From Pocillopora damicornis (taxonomy: Eukaryota), in the NCBI RefSeq assembly GCF_003704095.1, contig NW_020845340.1, positions 186,001 to 248,941 of the forward strand: 62,941 nt of DNA, in the 5' to 3' direction. Of this stretch, positions 5,630 to 18,900 are shown one piece after another. The notes under the pieces are model-generated. The model saw nothing but the letters and a program-made list of their open reading frames with translations. It was not told the DNA's origin and searched no databases. Within the stretch, counting starts at the first letter, position 1. Every line of letters starts with the position of its first letter. Made by a program: the position numbers and the translations under genes.

Positions 5630-6124
5630 TTAGAATACACGGAATTGGGCGGTTTCTTGACGCATGCGTCGATTACTTGATCGTCGAGACTTATTGAAAA
5701 GTGTGCAATTCCTGGCGGTTCGTTCGATGATTTTCTGCACCCTCGTAACAAAGCAAAATGTGAGGTATAAGAAGACTGCCAACACGCCTCCACTCAACAT
5801 CACAGGGGATAGAATGACGAGTAAGGAGAATGACGCTACAGTGACGGTTCCCCCGAAAACTAGAAGTGCGCAGAACGATATGGAAAGAAACGAGCCTAAT
5901 ACAAAGGCTAAGAAAACCAGAAAAGGCAAAAAACCAAGAACGACCAAGATGACCAAAAATAGGCACATAAAAGGATGGTTCTCAAGAAAATGTTGAGCTT
6001 GCCTGATCACAGGCATTGCTTGACAGTCTGCTTTCAGACTGGATGCGTATTGAATCGTTTGTCGAACATTACTCTTCAGCCTTAAGCTTGGAAACACCTG
6101 TTCCATACGCTCGATCCAAACCAT
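5630..6124 (-). CDS. LDAF1: Lipid droplet assembly factor 1 / promethin (TMEM159)-like protein, 164 aa, intronless CDS
   Basis: Strong start context gtcgccATGG. QHFLENHPF is followed by an ~75-residue uninterrupted hydrophobic stretch with an internal Pro (LGFLPFLVF) and a basic C-terminus, resembling promethin (YLDSHPFL...SAVPVGFF). Confidence 0.75.
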   Translation of the reverse strand: MVWIERMEQVFPSLRLKSNVRQTIQYASSLKADCQAMPVIRQAQHFLENHPFMCLFLVILVVLGFLPFLVFLAFVLGSFLSISFCALLVFGGTVTVASFSLLVILSPVMLSGGVLAVFLYLTFCFVTRVQKIIERTARNCTLFNKSRRSSNRRMRQETAQFRVF

Positions 6125-8951: not shown

Positions 8952-11900
8952 TTACAAATAATCAGCTATGATTGGGTAATCTAGTTCAACAAGAATATCA
9001 TACAGTTTTCCTACTGTGCTATGAGCCTTGACCTCCCAATTTCTTAAGACTTCATCAGCTGGATTTTCTATTCTTCTGTTGTCAAGGTATTGGATGGTGG
9101 TGTTGTCCAAACCAAGTTTCTCTGCTAAAGCTTTCCAATTGTCGTTCGCTGAAAATCCCAATGAAAAATGAACAAGGTTGGATTTTCGCCAATCTAAACA
9201 TTAAACTATCTCTAACGCAACCATCCTTGGAACAGTCAATCATCAAGAACGAGAACGACAACAATTCAAAACAAACAAACAGACAAACAAATCAGGCAAA
9301 TTGGCTCGTGGATAAATGATTCTTCATAGATCAGACAGCTTGCACACAGTAAGAAAGGGTGGCTCCACACAGACATAGATCTGGGAATTAAACTCATCAT
9401 GACATTTGAACGTCTGACATCTTTTTGGTCAATATTGAATGAGAAGTATGCATCGGAAACAATACACAATATAATTATTGTCTTAGCCACTGCCTGAGTT
9501 TTAAGATTGCACTGTAGCTGACCGTAAGTTATCCTCCTTTAACGAAAATTGTGAAAAGGGATGCCACAATTTTGAATCTCTTTTTAGCATCCTGGAAGTT
9601 TTTACATTGACGTAACAAAAGTCTTATTCTTCTTTTCCCATCTCTTGGCGATCTGTTCTACTCAATTAATCATAATCATTACAGTTTCCTCAAATGTGAT
9701 TGGTGCAGTAGCTGCTATATTTTTTTCACTAATCATTCGTTCATGAAGAAGACGTGACAAGACGAAAAAAACATCTTTCTCTAAAACATTTAATGTTACT
9801 CAAGCTTATTCTTAGTCTTTTCACGAAAGCGCCTGCTATTTGGGAATAAGCCGCACTGTTGGCGTTTCATACAGTTAAAAGTAATTCTAGCTGTTCTGAA
9901 TTTTAATTGATAGGCAGATTGAGATGGAACATACCACACAAGTTTCTGGTCAGGTCTCTTCGATGGGAGTAGCGTATCTCTCTTACAAACGTATGGGGTG
10001 ACAGCAGTGGACCTATCAAAGTAACAACAACACATTGTTTATTGTTATGAAAGGAACTGCAAAGCTTTTCCTAAGAGCAGAGATAAAATACTTGTTAGCT
10101 ATCCACTGCCAAGCACGCTGTACGCACGTTTTACTACCCTACGCCTTACTTCGCACCACTGTACACATGCATATGTACAACACCCAACCTGCGCCTTAGT
10201 GTATAACAAGCCGACTGGTCTATCAGAACTCGAGCTAATCCTAACTCCTGTAGCATACAACGAATAGTACAACTTTATTACTCCGACTGGACAGGTTGAT
10301 TATACTTTACAAGTGAGCCCCCTCACCTACCCTCCCCCAAAGTAAAGTATGTCAAGCACAGCATAATGACCAGCTCAGGAAATAAAATATGACCTCCCCC
10401 CCATGTTTTATGATAGACCAAAACCTATAGCTTTATACTCATGCAGGGCTAAATCAACATCATTACTGCAAAACTCACCAATGACTCCCTTATGAGCAGG
10501 CAAGGCCTGCCTAAATGTCTTTATCACACTTGGTCTTTCACCATCTGTAATCAGGTTTGTGTATCTACGAATGGAGTAATTTTTGCTTTCTAGCATCATT
10601 TCTGGTAGGGACGTTTTGTTTTGCCCAGGCACTTTTTCAAGTTCACTCCTCAACCGGTTTATTGCAAGCTGTCCCAGCTTATTTGTGATACGAGTTGCTT
10701 CATCGAGGGTTAGGTCTCCAAAACATTTAACTTCTCTCGGACCTGAAAACAATATTAAATGCAGTTAAATGCAATTTCACAGAGTTAACAACAAAGAGCC
10801 TCAGCATTCTCTAGTAGTCAGCGGTTTAGTATATGCACGTGTCGGAATTCCATGTGCTTTTCATTCGAGGCATTCTTGCGTGTGCTTTGGGCGTGAACTT
10901 TCAGTGCTGTTCGGAGTGGCAGCTCATCGTCCACGCAGTTTTCCCCACCCCTTCCCTCCCTCTTTCCTCTGTTTATTCAGTGTGATGGGTGCCTGTTTCC
11001 CTTTCCTGCGTGGGGGCCCATGGCTGGGTTATCAGGATTTTCCAACCATGGGAGCACACTCCATCTAGGAGCTGGCTGCCAATAGTCAAGCTCCTCACAT
11101 TTTTTCCACATTTGATCTTGTTATGTATTTTTAGTTTGTCGAGCGTTTTTTTTAACATGAGCCTCTGGCAAACACTTCCCACATCTTCAACATTAAATAT
11201 TAAACTATTCTATTCTATTCCCAGATGTCTTGGGCACCCAACCTCCACTTGGTGATTCAGTTGTTAAATTGATATTGGTATGTACATGAGCCAAAAATCA
11301 TAACCTACATGTACAATGCAGGTGTACTTTTTGGTTAGCAATGGCAAAGTATAAGTATTCTCTTATTACATATACAGTAGCCATCTTTAATACAAAAAGC
11401 AAACACAAGTTGGGGTGTGAAATAAATTCAGACCAAACTGATGGCTGACAGGCAGAATGAAAGAAGGAGGATGGGTAAAGTGAGCATGTGCTCAACTTTT
11501 TGTGCTTATCTCCTTAACCCTTTAACTCCCAGATCGAATTTGTCATTCTCCTCACTGTCAACCACATTATTCTTACGATGTTAGTTCAGAGAATTTAGTA
11601 TTGGATCCGCTAATTATCCCCGAATTGATATTTTTCTTTATTCTCATTACTTATCTGGTTGATATAGTATTGATATTGTAAGGAGAAATTCTGTGTTGGT
11701 CACTCATGGGAGTGAAAGGGTTAATTAGTGTCTTCTTCTACCTTAATCTAATATGGTATCTGAGCAAACTATTCCTAATAGCACCCCTAATTTGATTCAA
11801 TGTGAGCTATGCAAATCCTTGTCCAAAACTATTATAACACTTTACCCTCAAGGTGATAATGGGTGACAATCAAGTAACCAGCCCCTTTTCTGGATAAGCA

Positions 11901-14900
11901 TGAAAAGAAATGATGAGCAATGATGAAAGAAAAAAGGAGTGGAACTTGGCATGGTAGCCTTGCCTTTTGCTTTAGTGTTTGTTGTTTCACTTCAATTACA
12001 TCCAAAAGAGGAGCTCATTAAATGGCTTACAACATGAAAATTAGTCAGAAGGAAGAAACAATTACTAGGGATGAGATGCACCATTTACATACATACACCT
12101 AGCTATGGGTAGACAACAAGATTGAGGCATGTAGTATAAATAGATTTGGTACTTTGATAGACAGTCATGTGAATTGTGATTTGAACCTTTAACTACTGCA
12201 CAGAGATTGAGGCAGTGCAAGCAACTTGCCTCCTGAGGGACCTGATATTAGGTTGACCAATCCAAGCATTCATTCAGATGCCAGTATTGGCAAAGTTGCA
12301 TACTGCACAGAGAAGTTACATGTAAATAACTTCTGGGAATTGAAGGGTTAAGGCAATTAATAGTATATTTTATTTCACTCACTTAAACTCTCAAATTTCT
12401 TTGTCATATCATTAACAGGGCTATCAACATTGTCCTGGCCAAGGTTAAGAGGTTTCAGAAGGTAGCGTACACAATCTTTGCGCTGAGAACGATTTACAGC
12501 ATCAAGGAGAGTCTGAACAGTAGCCCTACTTCCATCAAGAGAAATCCAGCCCTTGATAACATTGAGTGTATGGCTTCCAGGTTCTTTTTCCACAAAAGAT
12601 TCTCCCTCAGCTGGCAAGCCAAGTTCTTTGAAAAGTCTGAAATAAAAGGACAATGGGCCGAGGTGAAGAGGTGCTATATCACAGGAAACAAGCCAAATTG
12701 CTCATACCACAGAAATCTTTTGCAGTTTCTGTAGGTTAAGCACATAGGACTAATGCTACTCCCCTTGATTTTACCAAGTTTGATTACAGGCTACCTTAGG
12801 CGTTTTGTCATATTCTCTAATAGCTCCTTGATACCAGTTTAAACTCCTGGATTGAGGAGTTTCATTGAAGATCAAACTACAAAATTCAAAATTTTTGTAC
12901 TAATAACACTACAGTGTAAAATGAACATGAAATTCTGAAAAATAAGCCAACCTTTTCCATCCATTCCCAAAAATTTCTTTGTCCATTTCTTTACAGAATT
13001 TTCCAAACACCTCGGGTTGCTCATCTAAAATATCTTGGACTTCCGATTTTAATGAGTAAACAGAGGTTTCTTGTATGGAACCAATATGTGTGGATGATTT
13101 TTCATCATTAGGAGATCCTACACATATTAAGAAAAAATTAGTATATAATTCACTGACTGATTGCTCAAGAGATAAATGCAAGAAGCACCTTGACAATTGC
13201 TTAATGTTAGACTGTGCATATAAAAGAATACTTATAAAATAATGCAAAAGAGTGTTGTAAGAAGAGAGGCACAGTTCTTGAAAATATCCACAAATAGGTG
13301 AATTTTGAAGTTAGGGGCCATTTAAACTTGTGATCTATGTTCTACTTTTCTGAAATGCCTTGGATCTGGGCATCTAATAAATAAAGTGAATAAAATGAAT
13401 CACATCCTTTCAATCACAATTACTGATAATTAATGTGACCCTTAAAACCAAATGAAATAATTCAAATGTTTTCTACGAGGTTCACAGCATGACCATTCCA
13501 AACTGACAAGTAACATCTGTTATGAATCATCAAGAACATCATGTGGTTCACATGTTATAAAAGATGCTGAAAATAGTGTTACATATACAGAACCTTCTCT
13601 TCCAGATTCCTGTATTTTTTTAGCCAATGGTGAATCAAAGATCTCTAGTGCTTTCACAAAATATCTAAATGCTTCAGGACCCTTTTTTGGAAGTATTTCA
13701 GTCAGCAGTTGATCCATTTTGGTGCAGTTTGACTTTTGATCACTTTGCAGTTCTTGTTTGTCATACTCATCAAGCACTTTGGTTAGATAAGGTAGCAACT
13801 TTTTTATATCCATGGAAGAAAATTGATCTGAACTTGTGCGAAGCACTCTCTTGTGTTCTTCTGTCATACCAACCTCATCTGAACAAAACAAAAATTTTTC
13901 ATGCAATCTCTGCCAAGGTAGCTATACTAAATATTAGCGGATAGAAAGGAGATAATATCTTCATATATGAATCCTACTTTTCCTGTTTTTTCCTCACACA
14001 CATGTGAATGAAATTACTGATAGAAGCCTTCCTCAATTACATTCATTGTGTTACAGAAAACCGTATATATGCATCAGTAAAAAAAGCCTGTGTTGTGTGG
14101 GGCTATTGACTCCTATGCAACACTCATAGACCTACAGTTACAGAAAGTTGTTTTGTGAATTATACAACTGGGTCTTACCAAATTTTTGACCATGCCAAGC
14201 ACTTATATACCTCTGTTTAAATAACAGAAGTACTTATTTGGGTATTTAATAAATACATGTACTGTTAGTTAACATATATTTACTTCAGTAAATGGTTTGA
14301 ACCCAGGGGTAACATGTAATAGTGTAGTCTGATCAATTGGGAGATTATAGTCCTTAGCATCACAAACAATCTGAACACAAAGACCAAACTTTACCAATGG
14401 ATCAAAACTGACCACTCACAACTGACTCACAACACTTGAGTCTCACATCCAATAACATCATGGCTACACTGACCAATCAGTTTACACGAATTGGACTTAG
14501 TACATTCAACTGACATCATCTATTCACTTGACTCTTATAACGACTTCCACTCAGATTGTCAAAACATCAGTCACTACTACCCACAACAGTCCTTCTCAGG
14601 ACAACAATCACCCGGGCAATCAGAATACACTATCACATACATGAACTTGTAACATTTGGTTATCTGCTGCTGTAAAACAGGCACATCTTTTTCTTGCCAA
14701 CATGCAGGCATGCCTTCTTTCCTACATAGTTTATCATTTTCTTTTGCACACTTAGAAGAACAAAAAACAACTAACACCAATATGGAAGAATGTGCATGGG
14801 TCAGCAAAAGGAAGTGGGTACAGAGAAAGACAAACATTGGGTCTGTTGTACAGTTCCTTGGATTTTATTGTGTGAACCAGTAGGGTAAGTGAGCAAGAAT

Positions 14901-15521
14901 TTCTCCACATCAAAGAAGTTTTCAGTATCAGTCTATGACCTTTAAATCTACAGATCTGATTACCAATTCCCCTCTCTAACTGCCACATTTTTTTTCTGAG
15001 TAGAAAAAGTTGGTATTACACCCTCTTGAAGATAATCTTTTCGATTTCCGTCACCTATTGGCAGAATAATGTTTTGAAATCACGAAGAGAACTTACGTGT
15101 TGATCAGTTTTGGGAGTTTGTATGGACATAGGGAAATACAGATGAGGAGTAAACGTGAACGATGTTGTTATCCATACTTCTTACTTGCAAACCATACTTT
15201 TGTCGGTGAACAAACAAAAACAACCTTACCTTTCAAAAAACTTGACTCGTCCATTCCTGAAGCCCTTATGAGAGGCTCCGCGAGGAATCTCTGGCTACTA
15301 TTGTACAGAGCTGTGATAAAGTTCTGAAAAGCATCATCTCCCTTTCTGGGAAGCATGTCGAGTAATTCTTCAGCCTGTTCTGATCGTGTTTTCTTTGCTT
15401 TCACCAGCTCCCGATCATCATCACCAAGAACGTCAAGTCTGTTTAACAGCTTCAGAGGTTCTAGGTCCCTTACAAGCACTTGTCGATGCTTTCGAAGGAT
15501 TTTTCTGTGTTCCTCTTCCAT
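8952..15521 (-). CDS. Multi death-fold adaptor protein: CARD-CARD-DD-(degenerate DD)-DD, 7 exons, 511 aa
   Basis: Exons are 15521-15230, 13878-13594, 13117-12952, 12636-12383, 10742-10479, 10012-9935 and 9148-8952. All introns are GT..AG with consistent phases (1,1,2,1,1,1), summing to 1536 nt. Exons 1 and 2 each carry a CARD signature (LLDMLPRKGDDAFQNFITAL; LLTEILPKKGPEAFRYFVKAL). Exons 3-4 (GWKRLFKELGL...GW...ATVQTLLDAV...RKDCV) and exons 6-7 (NWKALAEKLGL...VLRNW...STVGKLYDIL) carry death-domain signatures. The exon 2 donor (GTTCTG) is weak. Confidence 0.88.
11514..11724. mobile_element. piggyBac-type MITE (TTAA target, CCCT..AGGG ends) in intron 4 of the death-fold gene
   Basis: TTAACCCTTTAACTCCC ... 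GGGAGTGAAAGGGTTAA; related copies at 20048, 30612 and 58246. Confidence 0.8.
14390..14635 (+). repeat. Decayed hammerhead-type (Penelope-associated) repeat in intron 1 of the death-fold gene
   Basis: GACT-CTTATAA-C-GAC...GTC-AAAACATC-AGTC (14530-14572) keeps the stem I and stem II pairing, but the catalytic cores are mutated. Boundaries are approximate. Confidence 0.4.
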
Positions 15522-15932
15522 TTTAGAAGGCAAAAGCGGAAGCACAGAGAGTCTTCTTTAGTTATCAATTACGAAATGACTTCTTTCCGAAACCAAATAT
15601 TTCCTACATAAATGACATTTAAATCACAGAAGAAGAAGCCTATTCACAATACCAAAACACTTCGAGCTCCGTCATCTCTTTGACCCAGAGTTTGCCAGAT
15701 AATCAACGAAAGACGACGAGATTGGGGTGGTTGGGCAACGATGAGGGAATTTGTGAGCCTGCGAATAACAGACAAACTCTATATTAAATAACTATCATAT
15801 AGTGTACCAAAATATATGCTAAATCCAACATGGCGGACATATGGCATAGGTAGAACCCCACAATAAGTCTAATTTATTTCTTCTCTTTGAGGTGACGCAT
15901 GAAATATGCAGTGTGCTTTGTTCCTGCAAACC
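15522..15932. promoter_or_regulatory. Short bidirectional intergenic/promoter region between the death-fold gene and PIGC
   Basis: The divergent start codons are ~410 bp apart. The region is CpG-retaining and has a YY1-like AACATGGCG at 15827-15835. Confidence 0.6.
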
Positions 15933-18900
15933 ATGATTAATGATTCTGGGAAGGATAACGACTTCCTTCCAGTTCAGATGAAAAGGAGGAAGCCATGGAG
16001 AAAAGTGTTATATGAAGACCAAGGTGTTCCGGATAATTATGTAGACAAGTCGTTTCTTGATGAAATGAGGAAAAATCGTGAGTACAGCACTTTATGGATG
16101 AGGATTTATATCAAATTGCTATCTCTAGTGTACCGATTTTGCGATGCTCTGTATTGGTGTGCTGCATGTGCCCCATTCGGTTGTAAAGAGATTCCGCACT
16201 GAGCAGCCGTCAAATATTGAAGTTTATGAGAATGTTGGCAACTGATATGTTATTTGGTTCCTTCTCAAGAATTTGAATATATTTTTGGAATGATTTGAAG
16301 CCTATGCATGCTTAATTTGAAAACAAATTATCGGGCAACCTATAAGATATCTGCAAGTACGAGTTTAAATGGGATTTACGAATGTGCGGTGTAGCTAGTT
16401 GATCACGTTGTGGTTCAATTTATCATGGTTTCAATTATTTTTTTTGAAATGTAAATGTCACATCAGATTTTACTAAGCCTGAAGACGACAGAAAAAGAGT
16501 AGCTTAGGATATGAACCCACAACAGATATAGATTTGACAGACATATGAAAAGCAAATGAAAGTTAAAGGTAAATTTCTGATAAACTTTTAGTAAATACAA
16601 GAACCTACCAGTTCTGGTCAGTGGTTTCAGAGTCTGGAGCAGTGTCTCAACAGTTAAGCAGGTTAGAGGAATAAAAGTTACATTTTTTTTAAGAGCTGAT
16701 GTACTGATGTCTGGCTGTTTGTGTCTTGACAGCTAAGCCATTCCAAGTAAGATCATCATGCTAGCAGTGGTTCTGATCCTATTCCATGCACCAATTTAAG
16801 AAAAAAGTCACGCACAACTTGTAATATGAACGGCATTTCACACATCACCAATTAAAGATGGAGAACTTAAAATCTCACCCTACCTTGCTTTTCTGTAAAT
16901 TCACACATCACGTATTAATTTTGGGCTTAATCGTAAGTTTTAAAAATAGAAACCCTTTGCCACCTTCAGAGAGGGTTTTGANNNNNNNNNNNNNNNNNNN
17001 NNNNNNNNNNNNNNNNNNNNNNNNNNNNNNNNNNNNNNNNNNNNNNNNNNNNNNNNNNNNNNNNNNNNNNNNNNNNNNNNNGGGGAAATGACTACAGGTT
17101 GTTTTTAATGGTCTGGCCTCATCCATATGCATGCTCTCCATCAGTTCATGCCATAGAAACAGTAGGTGGTAATCAGCCAATTTTCTATGAATAATAAGAA
17201 TTCAGTTAGGTCCCCCAGTTCTGCACATGATATCTTGTACTTCAAGGTAGTGCTAGAAGAAAGAGAAACTGATTTGTGAACCATCTGTTATTAGGAGGAT
17301 AGTGTGTGAGTATTGGTAGTACTCAAAAAAATGTTGCTCATGTTTGCAGGAATGGATGACATTAGAATTTGTGTTGTGGTGCTTTGCTCTGTGTATGTAC
17401 TTTCCCCAGTTTTGAAAACCTTAACTGATACTATTAGCACAGACACCATTTATGCCATGACGGTAAGGACTGGCCTAAGTAAGTTACATTGTACAATGAA
17501 TTTGTATGAAAGAAACAATGTGAAAAGTGGATTACTCTGTGGCATCCAATCTTTTTTTTATTTTTTAAGTTTTATAATGGCCACCAGTCAAATTATTCTG
17601 AATCACGACTAAAAAAATGTCCACAACTATTTTAAAATATACAAGTTGTCTTTCACTTTCATCCTTGGCTCAAATGCTCACAAGTCTTCCTTTATTTTAC
17701 TAGTATTTTAGAATTTTTCAGTCTTTTTTTGCCTACATCTTTCTTACAACTTCACAAGTAATGTATGTAGCATAGTACATCACACTTGTGAATGATAAGT
17801 TATGAATTTATCCAAAAAAATAAATTTGCAATGAGTAATTGCATAAATTGAAGCCCAAGAGAGGAATTTAGTTGTCAGCAGTGTTAAAACTCAATTTGCC
17901 CTGAAGATAAATACTCCTTAGGTGCTATTACCAAATGTGCTAGATATTGAGGCATATGGTGGGAGTGAGAAAATTTTTAGTGAGTTCTCACTCCCCAAAT
18001 CTGATCTCAAATAATAGCTCTTTCAGCAAATGCTCTTGTTACATTTTTTTATGGAGAACCTTCACTCAGTTCCCTACTTTGATGGTACTGTTTTTCTTAT
18101 TCAGACCTTCATGCTTGGGATGAACCTTCTTCTGTATGACTATGGAACACATGCTGCAATGTAAGTGATAGAAACTATGTGACCGTCGTCTAATTCATAA
18201 CTTAGAACCATTAGTTAAGGGAATGTTCTTTTCAGTTAGCTAATTTAAAAAAAATTGTTGGATGTAATTGATTCTTTAACTTCTTTGCAAGTGCTAGGAT
18301 GGCAGCTCTTGAGCTATGGGCATTGAATCTTTTTCCAGCTAATACATGAAAGTTGTTTCATTATTTTTTGACAGAGTCTCAAGGTCTGCCTCCCTAAATG
18401 CCTCCATCTTTGCTTCAGTGTGTCTAGCATCACGTCTCCCCTCCTCCTGGCATGTCTTTGGGACTGTCACTTTTGCTATGCAATTGTTTGCTTTGTTTCC
18501 ATCACTGAGAAGACAGCTTAAGGTACACATATTTTTTGTCTTGTGAAATTATAGAGCATTGTTCAAATAAGTGTTGAAATTAATGCAAGACTCTGCACTC
18601 TGTTTTCACCTCTCTGTGATTGGTTTAGAAAACTTGTGGAACCATCTCAACCAATCAGGGGCAAAGCTTTAACCAAACACAACTTCATTACTCACATTTT
18701 TTCATGCACAGTTTGGGCCTTTTACCATATTCTCTCTGAGTTCTCATTGGCTCCTTGTGTTGTTTACTGTGGTGCTGATTTGTTTTTGTCAGTAATTAAT
18801 GTTGTTGGTTCTGTGTATGAAAAGTGCCCTTTATTTGTTTATTGGGATGTTTTCCAGCAACTTTTGTCAGTTTTTTGGAAAGTTTGGCATGTTCTGAATA

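What the first reader, a model, noticed from the sequence alone, without database searches (positions are those of the whole stretch)
8952..15521. Protein built only of death folds: tandem CARDs fused to two or three death domains
Seen: seven phase-consistent exons give 511 aa ordered CARD, CARD, DD, an ~85-aa helical unit, DD, with no NACHT, kinase, caspase, TIR or helicase segment. Established: RAIDD/CRADD has one CARD plus one DD, and tandem CARDs occur in RIG-I/MDA5/NOD2 attached to sensor domains. I know no characterised 2xCARD plus multi-DD pure adaptor. Inference: a signalosome scaffold that converts DD-based (Myddosome/PIDDosome/TNFR-type) assemblies into CARD filaments, in a possibly undescribed cnidarian immune or cell-death pathway.
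Basis: partly seen in the sequence, partly recalled or inferred. Interest (0 to 1): 0.82.

Follow-up and report, generated by a model that had tools for sequence, protein, structure and literature searches.

The report
Five-death-fold adaptor gene of stony corals
This is a real, expressed coral gene whose 511-residue protein is built only from protein-docking "death-fold" modules (two CARDs, two death domains and one orphan death-like unit); it is conserved across stony corals and unstudied, and it is a plausible but untested hub for coral cell-death or immune signalling.

Summary
Seven minus-strand exons (15521..8952) give an open 511-codon frame with GT-AG at every intron. RNA contigs from four independent studies show all six junctions. 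The window is Pocillopora damicornis, and NCBI annotates the gene as "uncharacterized protein LOC113672129". Its isoform X2 matches exons 1 and 3-7 exactly, so it skips the CARD2 exon.

Pfam finds CARD, CARD, Death and Death. The 88-residue unit in exon 5 has no sequence relative outside corals. With an alignment it folds confidently into a six-helix bundle, and its best structural matches are mostly death folds, but at modest Z (5.5 or lower).

Orthologues of about 510 residues with the same layout occur in Pocillopora, Stylophora, Oculina, Orbicella, Acropora and Montipora. The gene tree splits into the robust and complex coral clades. I found nothing outside Scleractinia, no catalytic domain, no paper and no characterised protein with this layout.

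The best reading is a CRADD/RAIDD-like non-enzymatic adaptor, enlarged by exon shuffling, that links death-domain assemblies to CARD effectors such as coral CARD-caspases. That function is inferred, not shown. Rival readings are a decoy or inhibitor, or an adaptor for other CARD- or DD-headed proteins. I class it as a new variant of a known kind, of moderate interest.

The scan had earlier noted related CARD/DD-headed genes elsewhere in this genome.

The parts
15230..15521 (-). Exon 1, coding part (aa 1-97): CARD1. ATG at 15521-15519; ends in phase 1.
   Evidence: Pfam CARD 5.1e-16, 58.9 bits against a cut-off of 23.9. RNA joint 15230/13878 seen in X1, X6 and X8. Orthologues start at the same Met.
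15522..15599 (-). 5' UTR, at least to here. It includes the in-frame TAA at 15560-15558.
   Evidence: RNA contigs run unbroken from 15230 to 15599 and beyond (table 8, records 5, 20 and 28). Sequence read.
13594..13878 (-). Exon 2 (aa 98-192): CARD2. The whole domain sits on one symmetric phase 1-1 exon of 285 nt, which is skipped in annotated isoform X2.
   Evidence: Pfam CARD_2 7.9e-8 and CARD 1.5e-5. Joints 15230/13878 and 13594/13117. P0021 lacks exactly this exon. The best PDB sequence hit is the RAIDD CARD.
12952..13117 (-). Exon 3 (aa 193-247): linker plus the first helix of death domain 1.
   Evidence: Joints 13594/13117 and 12952/12636. In the Montipora orthologue P0016, Pfam Death covers residues 230-308, which is profile positions 2-83.
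12383..12636 (-). Exon 4 (aa 248-332): the rest of death domain 1, plus a linker of about 17 aa.
   Evidence: Pfam Death 2.1e-5, 25.0 bits against a cut-off of 22.6. Joints seen in all four runs. No paralogue in the genome at E<=0.01.
10479..10742 (-). Exon 5 (aa 333-420): orphan unit 'X', a predicted six-helix death-like fold on one symmetric phase 1-1 exon.
   Evidence: No Pfam or PDB sequence hit. AlphaFold2 with alignment A2 gave pLDDT 86.9 and pTM 0.77. The best structural match is the RAIDD DD 2of5_A (Z 5.5, rmsd 3.2, 72 aligned), and about two thirds of the top 50 matches are death folds.
9935..10012 (-). Exon 6 (aa 421-446): first helix of death domain 2.
   Evidence: Joint 10479/10012 in all four runs. 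The loose end at 9935 equals the start of exon 7.
8952..9148 (-). Exon 7 (aa 447-511 plus the stop at 8954-8952): the rest of death domain 2.
   Evidence: Pfam Death 2.6e-10. DD2 is the most conserved part of the family, with mean pairwise identity 0.64. About 19 paralogous exons with the same boundary occur in the genome.

Best explanation
What is shown. This is Pocillopora damicornis gene LOC113672129. It is a seven-exon, polyadenylated, expressed gene that encodes a 511-aa soluble protein made only of death-fold modules, in the order CARD1, CARD2, DD1, X and DD2. X is an orphan six-helix unit that is most likely a very divergent death fold. Each module is bounded by phase-1 introns, and CARD2 and X each occupy a single symmetric exon. 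This is the signature of assembly by exon shuffling, and it allows in-frame isoforms. One annotated isoform drops CARD2. The family is single-copy-like and has been inherited vertically since the ancestor of stony corals.

What is inferred. The protein works as a non-enzymatic adaptor or scaffold on the CRADD/RAIDD principle. Its DD side (DD1, X, DD2) would join a helical death-domain oligomer formed by an upstream DD protein. That would cluster the tandem CARDs, which would then recruit or nucleate CARD effectors, most plausibly the CARD-bearing caspases that corals have in number. Having several folds on one chain could supply several neighbouring positions of a helical assembly at once and so lower its nucleation barrier.
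For: Gene model and expression. Domains. X fold. Conservation across robust and complex corals, with all five modules at 50-64% mean pairwise identity. No catalytic family appears in the exon ORFs or in the orthologues scanned. The gene is boxed in by a head-to-head PIG-C/GPI2 gene from 15906 and a promethin-like ORF at 5630-6124, which leaves no room for further coding exons. The nearest known kind by language-model features is the CRADD family (score 0.87, 172 shared features). The best PDB sequence hit of CARD2 is the RAIDD CARD (2.1e-7 with the profile). Corals have CARD-caspase-3/7-like initiators said to be 'activated on death platforms' that are not yet identified (PMC7586219). That death folds act by homotypic helical oligomerisation is established knowledge (PIDDosome, Myddosome, RIG-I 2CARD/MAVS).
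Against: No binding partner, oligomer or phenotype is known for any member. No domain is clearly orthologous to a vertebrate one. The DD1 and DD2 hits to PDB death domains are weak (E about 3e-3 to 6e-3). X is called a death fold only from a predicted model, at Z 5.5 or lower, which the tool warns can be a common helical arrangement. Foldseek found nothing significant for X. A death-fold-only protein can just as well inhibit as transmit.
Confidence: 0.55

Rival explanations
1. Decoy or brake. As a protein with docking folds but no effector, it would cap or sequester CARD and DD assemblies, in the manner of cFLIP/vFLIP, CARD-only proteins such as ICEBERG, or PEA-15. Isoforms with fewer folds would tune the threshold.
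For: There is no catalytic or membrane-anchoring part. Annotated isoforms lack CARD2 (Pocillopora, Oculina) or DD2 (Orbicella). ICEBERG is among the CARD1 hits (1.2e-4). Tandem-DED regulators are among the best structural matches of X (MC159 Z 5.1, cFLIP Z 4.3).
Against: The known bipartite death-fold-only proteins with two different fold classes (RAIDD, FADD, ASC) are transmitters, not brakes. All five modules are conserved about equally, which fits a bridge that needs both ends.
Confidence: 0.22
2. Adaptor of a coral-specific sensor system rather than of classical death receptors. It would dock to CARD-headed or DD-headed proteins that are expanded in corals: the CARD/DD - coiled coil - discoidin-like genes, Roc-COR-DD proteins, RLR-type CARDs or DD-NLRs. 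In that role it would act as a MAVS-like or ASC-like hub.
For: The closest genomic relatives of CARD1 (50% identity, 1.7e-18) and CARD2 (40%) are the CARD exons of two tandem CARD - coiled coil - F5/8-C genes at C3172:98754-110350. Earlier scan notes describe that family as swapping CARD and DD heads. The nearest non-orthologous relative of DD2 is the DD of a Montipora Roc-COR-DD protein (51% identity), and about 19 DD2-type exons exist in the genome. Both CARDs also pass the RIG-I/MAVS-type CARD_2 model, and RIG-I CARD2 is a PDB hit of CARD1 (6.3e-6).
Against: Sequence kinship of folds is not evidence of binding. The CARD tree is unresolved. No TM anchor or helicase is present. The DD heads of the C3172 cluster were not among the relatives of DD1 or DD2.
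Confidence: 0.15
3. Artefact: two neighbouring genes (a CARD-CARD gene and a DD gene), or a fragment of a larger catalytic gene, wrongly joined.
For: None found. In principle, each exon ORF could be read on past its donor site.
Against: All six junctions are seen in RNA contigs of several studies, and single contigs bridge exons 1-2, 3-4 and 4-5. The NCBI models agree. Proteins of 504-527 aa with the same layout occur in six other genera, including transcript-derived ones. There is a stop upstream of the ATG and flanking genes on both sides.
Confidence: 0.02

Closest known systems
CRADD/RAIDD (CARD-DD adaptor of the PIDDosome)
   Same: It is a non-enzymatic protein made only of a CARD and a DD class of death fold. 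The RAIDD CARD is the best PDB sequence hit of CARD2. The CRADD family is the nearest cluster by protein-language features. The RAIDD DD is the top structural match of unit X.
   Different: CRADD has one CARD and one DD in about 200 aa. This protein has two CARDs, two DDs and an extra orphan fold in 511 aa. The DDs are not RAIDD-like by sequence. The genome has a separate canonical two-exon CARD-DD gene at C1211:170067-171286, whose CARD also hits RAIDD best.
Tandem-CARD proteins RIG-I, MDA5 and NOD2
   Same: It has two adjacent CARDs with a short linker. Both CARDs pass Pfam CARD_2, and RIG-I CARD2 is a PDB hit of CARD1.
   Different: Those proteins carry helicase or NACHT-LRR sensor parts and no DD. 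This protein has no sensor part and has DDs.
FADD (DED-DD) and ASC (PYD-CARD) bipartite adaptors
   Same: The logic is the same: two classes of death fold on one chain, bridging an upstream oligomer to a downstream caspase. The FADD DD is among the DD2 hits (about 5e-3).
   Different: The fold classes and fold number differ, and there is no orthology.
Tandem-DED regulators (cFLIP, viral FLIP MC159, caspase-8 prodomain)
   Same: They have back-to-back death folds with almost no linker, like X-DD2. They are among the best structural matches of X (Z 4.3-5.1).
   Different: Neither Pfam nor PDB sequence searches see a DED in X. A direct X-DD2 contact was not supported or excluded.
Coral CARD/DD - coiled coil - discoidin-like gene family (unnamed; earlier scan notes s1-763558 and s1-763544)
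   Same: Its CARD exons are the nearest paralogues of CARD1 and CARD2 (50% and 40% identity). It is also restricted to corals and built by exon shuffling of death-fold heads.
   Different: Those genes have one head plus a coiled coil and an F5/8-C-type beta sandwich. This gene has only death folds.

Membership tests
Death-fold superfamily, CARD (Pfam PF00619 / PF16739) | Sequence match above the curated Pfam cut-off, twice in the protein | tested here: met
   Exon 1 scores 58.9 bits on CARD (cut-off 23.9). Exon 2 scores 32.7 bits on CARD_2 (cut-off 28.2) and 25.4 bits on CARD. The orthologues show two CARD stretches each. An hhalign comparison of CARD1 and CARD2 gave 99.2% probability.
Death-fold superfamily, Death domain (Pfam PF00531) | Sequence match above the curated cut-off, twice in the protein | tested here: met
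   Exon 4 scores 25.0 bits and exon 7 scores 40.7 bits (cut-off 22.6). Full-length orthologues show two Death stretches, and DD1 covers profile positions 2-83 in P0016.
Death-fold superfamily, unit X as a third DD-like fold | Six-helix Greek-key bundle related to DD, DED, CARD or PYD | tested here: inconclusive
   The confident model has six helices (pLDDT 86.9). Death folds dominate the structural matches, but at Z 5.5 or lower. Foldseek was not significant. There is no Pfam, PDB-sequence or internal profile signal.
CRADD/RAIDD | Architecture of exactly one N-terminal CARD and one C-terminal DD, about 200 aa | tested here: not met
   The protein is 511 aa with 2 CARDs, 2 DDs and X.
CRADD/RAIDD | One-to-one orthology of its CARD and DD to RAIDD | tested here: inconclusive
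   CARD2 hits the RAIDD CARD best (2.1e-7 with the profile, 6.3e-3 as a single sequence). So does the CARD of the separate CARD-DD gene at C1211 (1.3e-3). The best PDB hits of DD1 and DD2 are NRADD/ankyrin-3 and FADD/MyD88, not RAIDD.
CRADD/RAIDD | Binds the PIDD DD and the caspase-2 CARD | not testable with these tools
   This needs binding assays.
RLR / MAVS-type tandem-CARD signalling proteins | CARD_2-type CARDs joined to a DExD/H helicase (RLR) or a C-terminal membrane anchor (MAVS) | tested here: not met
   The CARD_2 matches are present. No helicase or other family was found in any exon or orthologue. The C-terminus is a DD.

The most novel reading that the evidence does not exclude
The protein is a stony-coral invention that acts as the common hub for the coral-expanded CARD-headed and DD-headed putative sensors (the CARD/DD - coiled coil - discoidin-like family and Roc-COR-DD proteins). 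Its covalently linked DD1-X-DD2 and CARD1-CARD2 arrays would act as pre-formed seeds that template helical assemblies and fire the coral CARD-caspases. Exon-2 skipping would set the threshold. On this reading it is a self-contained, lineage-specific death or immune signalosome, with an orphan sixth class of death fold (X).
Probability: 0.12. Interest if true: 0.8.

Novelty: new variant of a known kind. Interest (0 to 1): 0.5.

Why it matters
Coral bleaching, disease and symbiont control run through apoptosis and innate immune pathways. Their wiring is inferred mostly from vertebrate homologues. [quoted passage not shown] This family is a conserved, expressed, coral-restricted protein that carries both CARDs and DDs and nothing else, so it is a concrete candidate for such a platform component and can be tested directly. 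It is also a clean example of building a multi-module adaptor by phase-1 exon shuffling. To my knowledge, five death folds on one chain is more than any characterised adaptor has. Its unit X may be a death-like fold that sequence methods cannot see.

Tried and rejected
Joined-model step left out. The joined 511-aa translation of the window's exons was not sent to any search, scan or fold tool. Exons were searched one by one by reference. In one search they were concatenated inside a script only to count length, phase and stops, and nothing of it was printed. Full-length work used database proteins instead: P0021, which is this gene's NCBI isoform X2, and P0038 and others, which are orthologues.

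- A single-sequence AlphaFold2 run of X gave a poor model (pLDDT 58). It was replaced by the alignment-based model.
- Foldseek against the PDB found nothing at E<=0.001 for X.
- hhalign among the five modules detected only CARD1~CARD2. The positive control DD1~DD2 reached only 8%, so the negative result for X is uninformative.
- Sequence and profile searches of X against PDB and Pfam found nothing.
- Complex prediction of X against DD2 returned no verdict (score 0.00, alignment not used). It counts neither for nor against a rigid X-DD2 unit.
- The tree of all CARD exons in the genome was unresolved, so only pairwise identities are quoted.
- Three word-index searches for relatives found only scleractinian family members (whole X2 isoform, 13-sequence profile, Acropora residues 1-330 at E<=10). 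phmmer of X against 1.84 billion representatives found 20 hits. The three named ones I checked are two coral proteins and one bacterial protein (P0015, HYR/PKD repeats), which I take for a false hit. Most of the rest are short unnamed ORF fragments whose source I did not check. The word index is insensitive below roughly 35% identity, so absence outside Scleractinia is provisional.
- A full-text search for the gene and protein accessions found no paper. A search for the architecture written as CARD-CARD-DD and similar forms found nothing relevant.
- Exon-2 skipping was not seen among the contig joints of the four RNA runs. Contigs drop rare forms, so this says little.
- Rfam found no family in the high-depth intron repeat.
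Full report
**1. The observation**

The finding lies on the minus strand. Reading 16000-8700 in reverse complement and checking phases in a script gives seven exons: 15521-15230, 13878-13594, 13117-12952, 12636-12383, 10742-10479, 10012-9935 and 9148-8952. They total 1536 nt, which is 511 codons plus a stop. There is no internal stop, and every intron is GT..AG with a pyrimidine-rich acceptor. The phases agree (0|1, 1|1, 1|2, 2|1, 1|1, 1|1, 1|stop). An in-frame TAA at 15560-15558 sits 13 codons upstream of the ATG.

The joined translation was not sent to any search or fold tool. Exons were searched singly by reference. In one search the exons were concatenated only to count frame and stops, and nothing of that was printed.

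**2. RNA evidence**

The stretch was found in 24 public runs from 10 studies. Fourteen are on record as RNA and hold 0.29-0.44 of the sampled words, about the share expected for the exons plus UTRs.

I laid contigs of four RNA runs from four studies on 9600-15599.
- Joints appear at 15230/13878 (X1, X6, X8), 13594/13117 (X6, X8), 12952/12636 (all four), 12383/10742 (all four) and 10479/10012 (all four).
- All joints have CT..AC ends on the + strand, which is GT..AG on the minus strand.
- At 9935 all four runs show a loose end of 207-255 letters. Its consensus is the reverse complement of the first 30 bases of exon 7, so the sixth junction (9935/9148) is also seen, although exon 7 lay outside the 6,000-letter limit.
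- Single contigs bridge exons 1-2, 3-4 and 4-5.
- The 5' exon runs unspliced past 15599.

**3. Identity and annotation**

The genome is 234.35 Mb in 4,393 contigs. An exact cluster look-up identifies the gene as Pocillopora damicornis "uncharacterized protein LOC113672129 isoform X2" (XP_027044210.1, 416 aa, P0021), on a contig of 248,941 bases, which is the length of my contig. P0021 maps at 100% to exons 1, 3, 4, 5, 6 and 7. The annotated X2 isoform therefore skips exon 2, which carries CARD2 on 285 nt in phase 1-1. So the gene model is already public. Its function is not.

**4. Domains**

Pfam results on the exon ORFs:

| Exon | Family | E-value | Profile positions |
|---|---|---|---|
| 1 | CARD | 5.1e-16 | |
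| 2 | CARD_2 / CARD | 7.9e-8 / 1.5e-5 | |
| 4 | Death | 2.1e-5 | 20-82 |
| 7 | Death | 2.6e-10 | 15-77 |
| 3, 5 | none | | |

In full-length orthologues Pfam sees two CARD and two Death stretches. DD1 covers profile positions 2-83 once exons 3 and 4 are joined in the natural protein. No other family passes its cut-off.

A profile of 13 orthologues against PDB sequences gave these matches:
- CARD2 matches the RAIDD CARD (2.1e-7).
- CARD1 matches CARD8, Apaf-1 and RIG-I CARD2 (about 3e-6 to 6e-6).
- DD1 matches NRADD and ankyrin-3 (about 3e-3 to 4e-3).
- DD2 matches FADD, MyD88 and IRAK4 (about 5e-3 to 9e-3).

None of these is close enough to call orthology.

**5. The 88-residue unit X (exon 5)**

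X has no Pfam or PDB sequence match, either alone or as a profile. phmmer against 1.84 billion representative proteins found 20 hits. The three named ones I checked are two coral proteins and one bacterial repeat protein that I take for a false hit. Most of the rest are short unnamed ORF fragments that I did not trace to a source.

Folded alone, X gave a poor model. With a 28-sequence alignment it gave a confident one (pLDDT 86.9, pTM 0.77) with six helices.
- An exhaustive structural comparison with 48,161 PDB representatives put the RAIDD death domain first (2of5_A: Z 5.5, rmsd 3.2 Å, 72 of 87 residues aligned). It was followed by MC159, caspase-8, FADD and PEA-15 DEDs, TNFR1/TRADD DDs, pyrin domains and CARDs. 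About two thirds of the top 50 are death folds.
- A second look at Foldseek's own list gave death folds in 12 of the top 13 rows.
- The Z values are modest for a helical bundle, and Foldseek itself was not significant.

I therefore call X a probable, very divergent death-like fold. It is not a proven one, and I cannot assign it to a class. Internal profile comparison was uninformative because the DD1~DD2 control also failed.

**6. Family and distribution**

Word-index searches with the X2 isoform, with a 13-sequence profile and with an Acropora N-terminal region, together with cluster look-ups, found proteins of 504-527 aa with the same Pfam content in these taxa:
- Pocillopora meandrina and P. 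verrucosa
- Stylophora pistillata
- Oculina patagonica
- Orbicella faveolata
- Acropora digitifera, A. palmata and A. muricata
- Montipora capricornis
- several transcript-derived Logan contigs

All are named "uncharacterized" or "Death domain-containing protein".

The alignment is collinear over all five modules. Mean pairwise identity is 0.61 for CARD1, 0.52 for CARD2, 0.60 for DD1, 0.50 for X and 0.64 for DD2. The maximum-likelihood tree has two fully supported halves that match the robust and complex coral clades. This fits vertical descent from the scleractinian ancestor.

Nothing outside Scleractinia appeared, even at E<=10. The word index is insensitive to distant relatives, so this absence is provisional.

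Other annotated isoforms lack one CARD (Oculina X5, 451 aa) or DD2 (Orbicella X2, 426 aa).

**7. How the gene was built**

CARD2 and X each sit on one symmetric phase 1-1 exon. DD1 (exons 3-4) and DD2 (exons 6-7) are bounded by phase-1 introns. This is the classical geometry of exon shuffling.

Evidence on the origin of each module:
- CARD1 and CARD2 are 37% identical to each other.
- Their nearest relatives in the genome are the CARD exons of two tandem genes at C3172:98754-110350 (50% identity to CARD1, 40% to CARD2). These genes continue into coiled coils and an F5/8-C-type domain. This is the family that earlier notes of this scan describe as swapping CARD and DD heads.
- A tree of all CARD exons was unresolved.
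- DD1 has no paralogue.
- The DD2 exon has about 19 paralogues with the same exon boundary. Its nearest database relative outside the family is the DD of a Montipora Roc-COR-DD protein.
- Exons 5-7 (X-DD2) exist as a second copy at G000:C2390:413960-415936, with the introns in place. In this assembly that copy has an in-frame TAA in X and a second in-frame stop in the DD. An intact X-DD paralogue exists in Montipora (P0032, 407 aa). So X-DD2 behaves as a cassette.

A test of direct X-DD2 contact gave no verdict.

**8. Boundaries**

A PIG-C/GPI2 gene starts head-to-head at 15906 on the + strand, and a promethin-like ORF lies at 5630-6124. Together with the upstream stop, the terminal stop and the ortholog lengths, this excludes hidden catalytic exons. 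The genome has 21 CARD and at least 131 DD exon matches. It also has a separate canonical CARD-DD pair at C1211:170067-171286, whose CARD likewise hits RAIDD best. This gene is therefore not simply the CRADD orthologue.

**9. Mechanism**

What is shown: an expressed, conserved protein that consists only of homotypic docking folds of two classes.

What is inferred from established death-fold biology (PIDDosome, Myddosome, DISC, RIG-I 2CARD/MAVS): the DD side enters a DD oligomer, and the clustered tandem CARDs recruit CARD effectors. Corals have CARD-bearing caspase-3/7-like initiators whose activating platform is unknown (PMC7586219). Coral-restricted gene families are enriched in immune signalling (PMC6208414).

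The rivals are a decoy or brake role, and a hub role for coral-specific CARD- or DD-headed proteins. The artefact reading is excluded.

**10. Novelty and score**

The closest known kind is CRADD/RAIDD. The membership test on architecture fails. I found no paper on any member and no description of the layout. Death-fold shuffling in invertebrates is well known (PMC2575513), so the existence of an odd combination is not a surprise in itself.

What is new is threefold:
- a five-fold, death-fold-only layout that has been conserved since the scleractinian ancestor;
- an orphan death-like unit;
- cassette exons that change the number of folds.

I rate it a new variant of a known kind, with interest about 0.5.

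Noticed in passing
window 11514-11725 (intron 4): A dispersed repeat of about 212 bp. The first look found 3,250 candidate copies in the genome, and the 40 scored are 85-92% identical. RNA contig depth here reaches 184,000. No Rfam family matches. It looks like a SINE- or MITE-like element that is transcribed or carried in many transcripts.
   Followed up: partly
window 23337-59438, minus strand: A tandem array of seven intronless ORFs of 289-327 aa. All are rhodopsin-family GPCRs (7tm_1, E 1e-25 to 7e-39).
   Followed up: partly
window 15906-16202 (+) and 5630-6124 (-): The flanking genes. A PIG-C/GPI2 first exon lies head-to-head with the death-fold gene, 385 bp between the two ATGs, which suggests a shared bidirectional promoter. 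A promethin-like ORF lies downstream.
   Followed up: partly
G000:C2390:413960-415936 (+) (L002-L004): A partial duplicate of exons 5-7 (X, DD2) with the introns kept, 61/48/52% identical. In this assembly it has an in-frame TAA in X and a second in-frame stop in the DD. An ORF fragment from another sample (P0002) reads Q where this copy has the stop in X, so the copy may be intact elsewhere.
   Followed up: partly
G000:C3172:98754-110350 (+) (L006-L007): Two tandem genes, each made of a CARD exon, long coiled-coil exons and an F5/8-C / galactose-binding-like domain. Their CARDs are the nearest paralogues of CARD1 and CARD2. The contig is also very rich in DD exons. This matches earlier scan notes s1-763558 and s1-763544.
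   Followed up: partly
G000:C1211:170067-171286 (+) and C1211:190080-190313 (+): A canonical CARD exon followed about 750 bp later by a DD exon, which makes a CRADD-like gene. A second CARD copy 20 kb away carries an in-frame TAA.
   Followed up: partly
G000:C1619:663737-665511 (-): Two CARD exons 1.3 kb apart on one strand, so this is another tandem-CARD gene. No DD hit lies on that contig. I did not examine it further.
   Followed up: no
P0051 (Orbicella faveolata X2, 426 aa); P0043 (Oculina patagonica X5, 451 aa): Annotated isoforms of the orthologues end before DD2 (Orbicella) or lack one CARD (Oculina). Variation in the number of death folds may therefore be a conserved feature of the family.
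   Followed up: partly
P0013 (Montipora foliosa, 347 aa): The X-DD paralogue is annotated as 'doublesex- and mab-3-related transcription factor A2-like', because a partial DM domain sits at its N-terminus. This is probably a mis-joined gene model.
   Followed up: no
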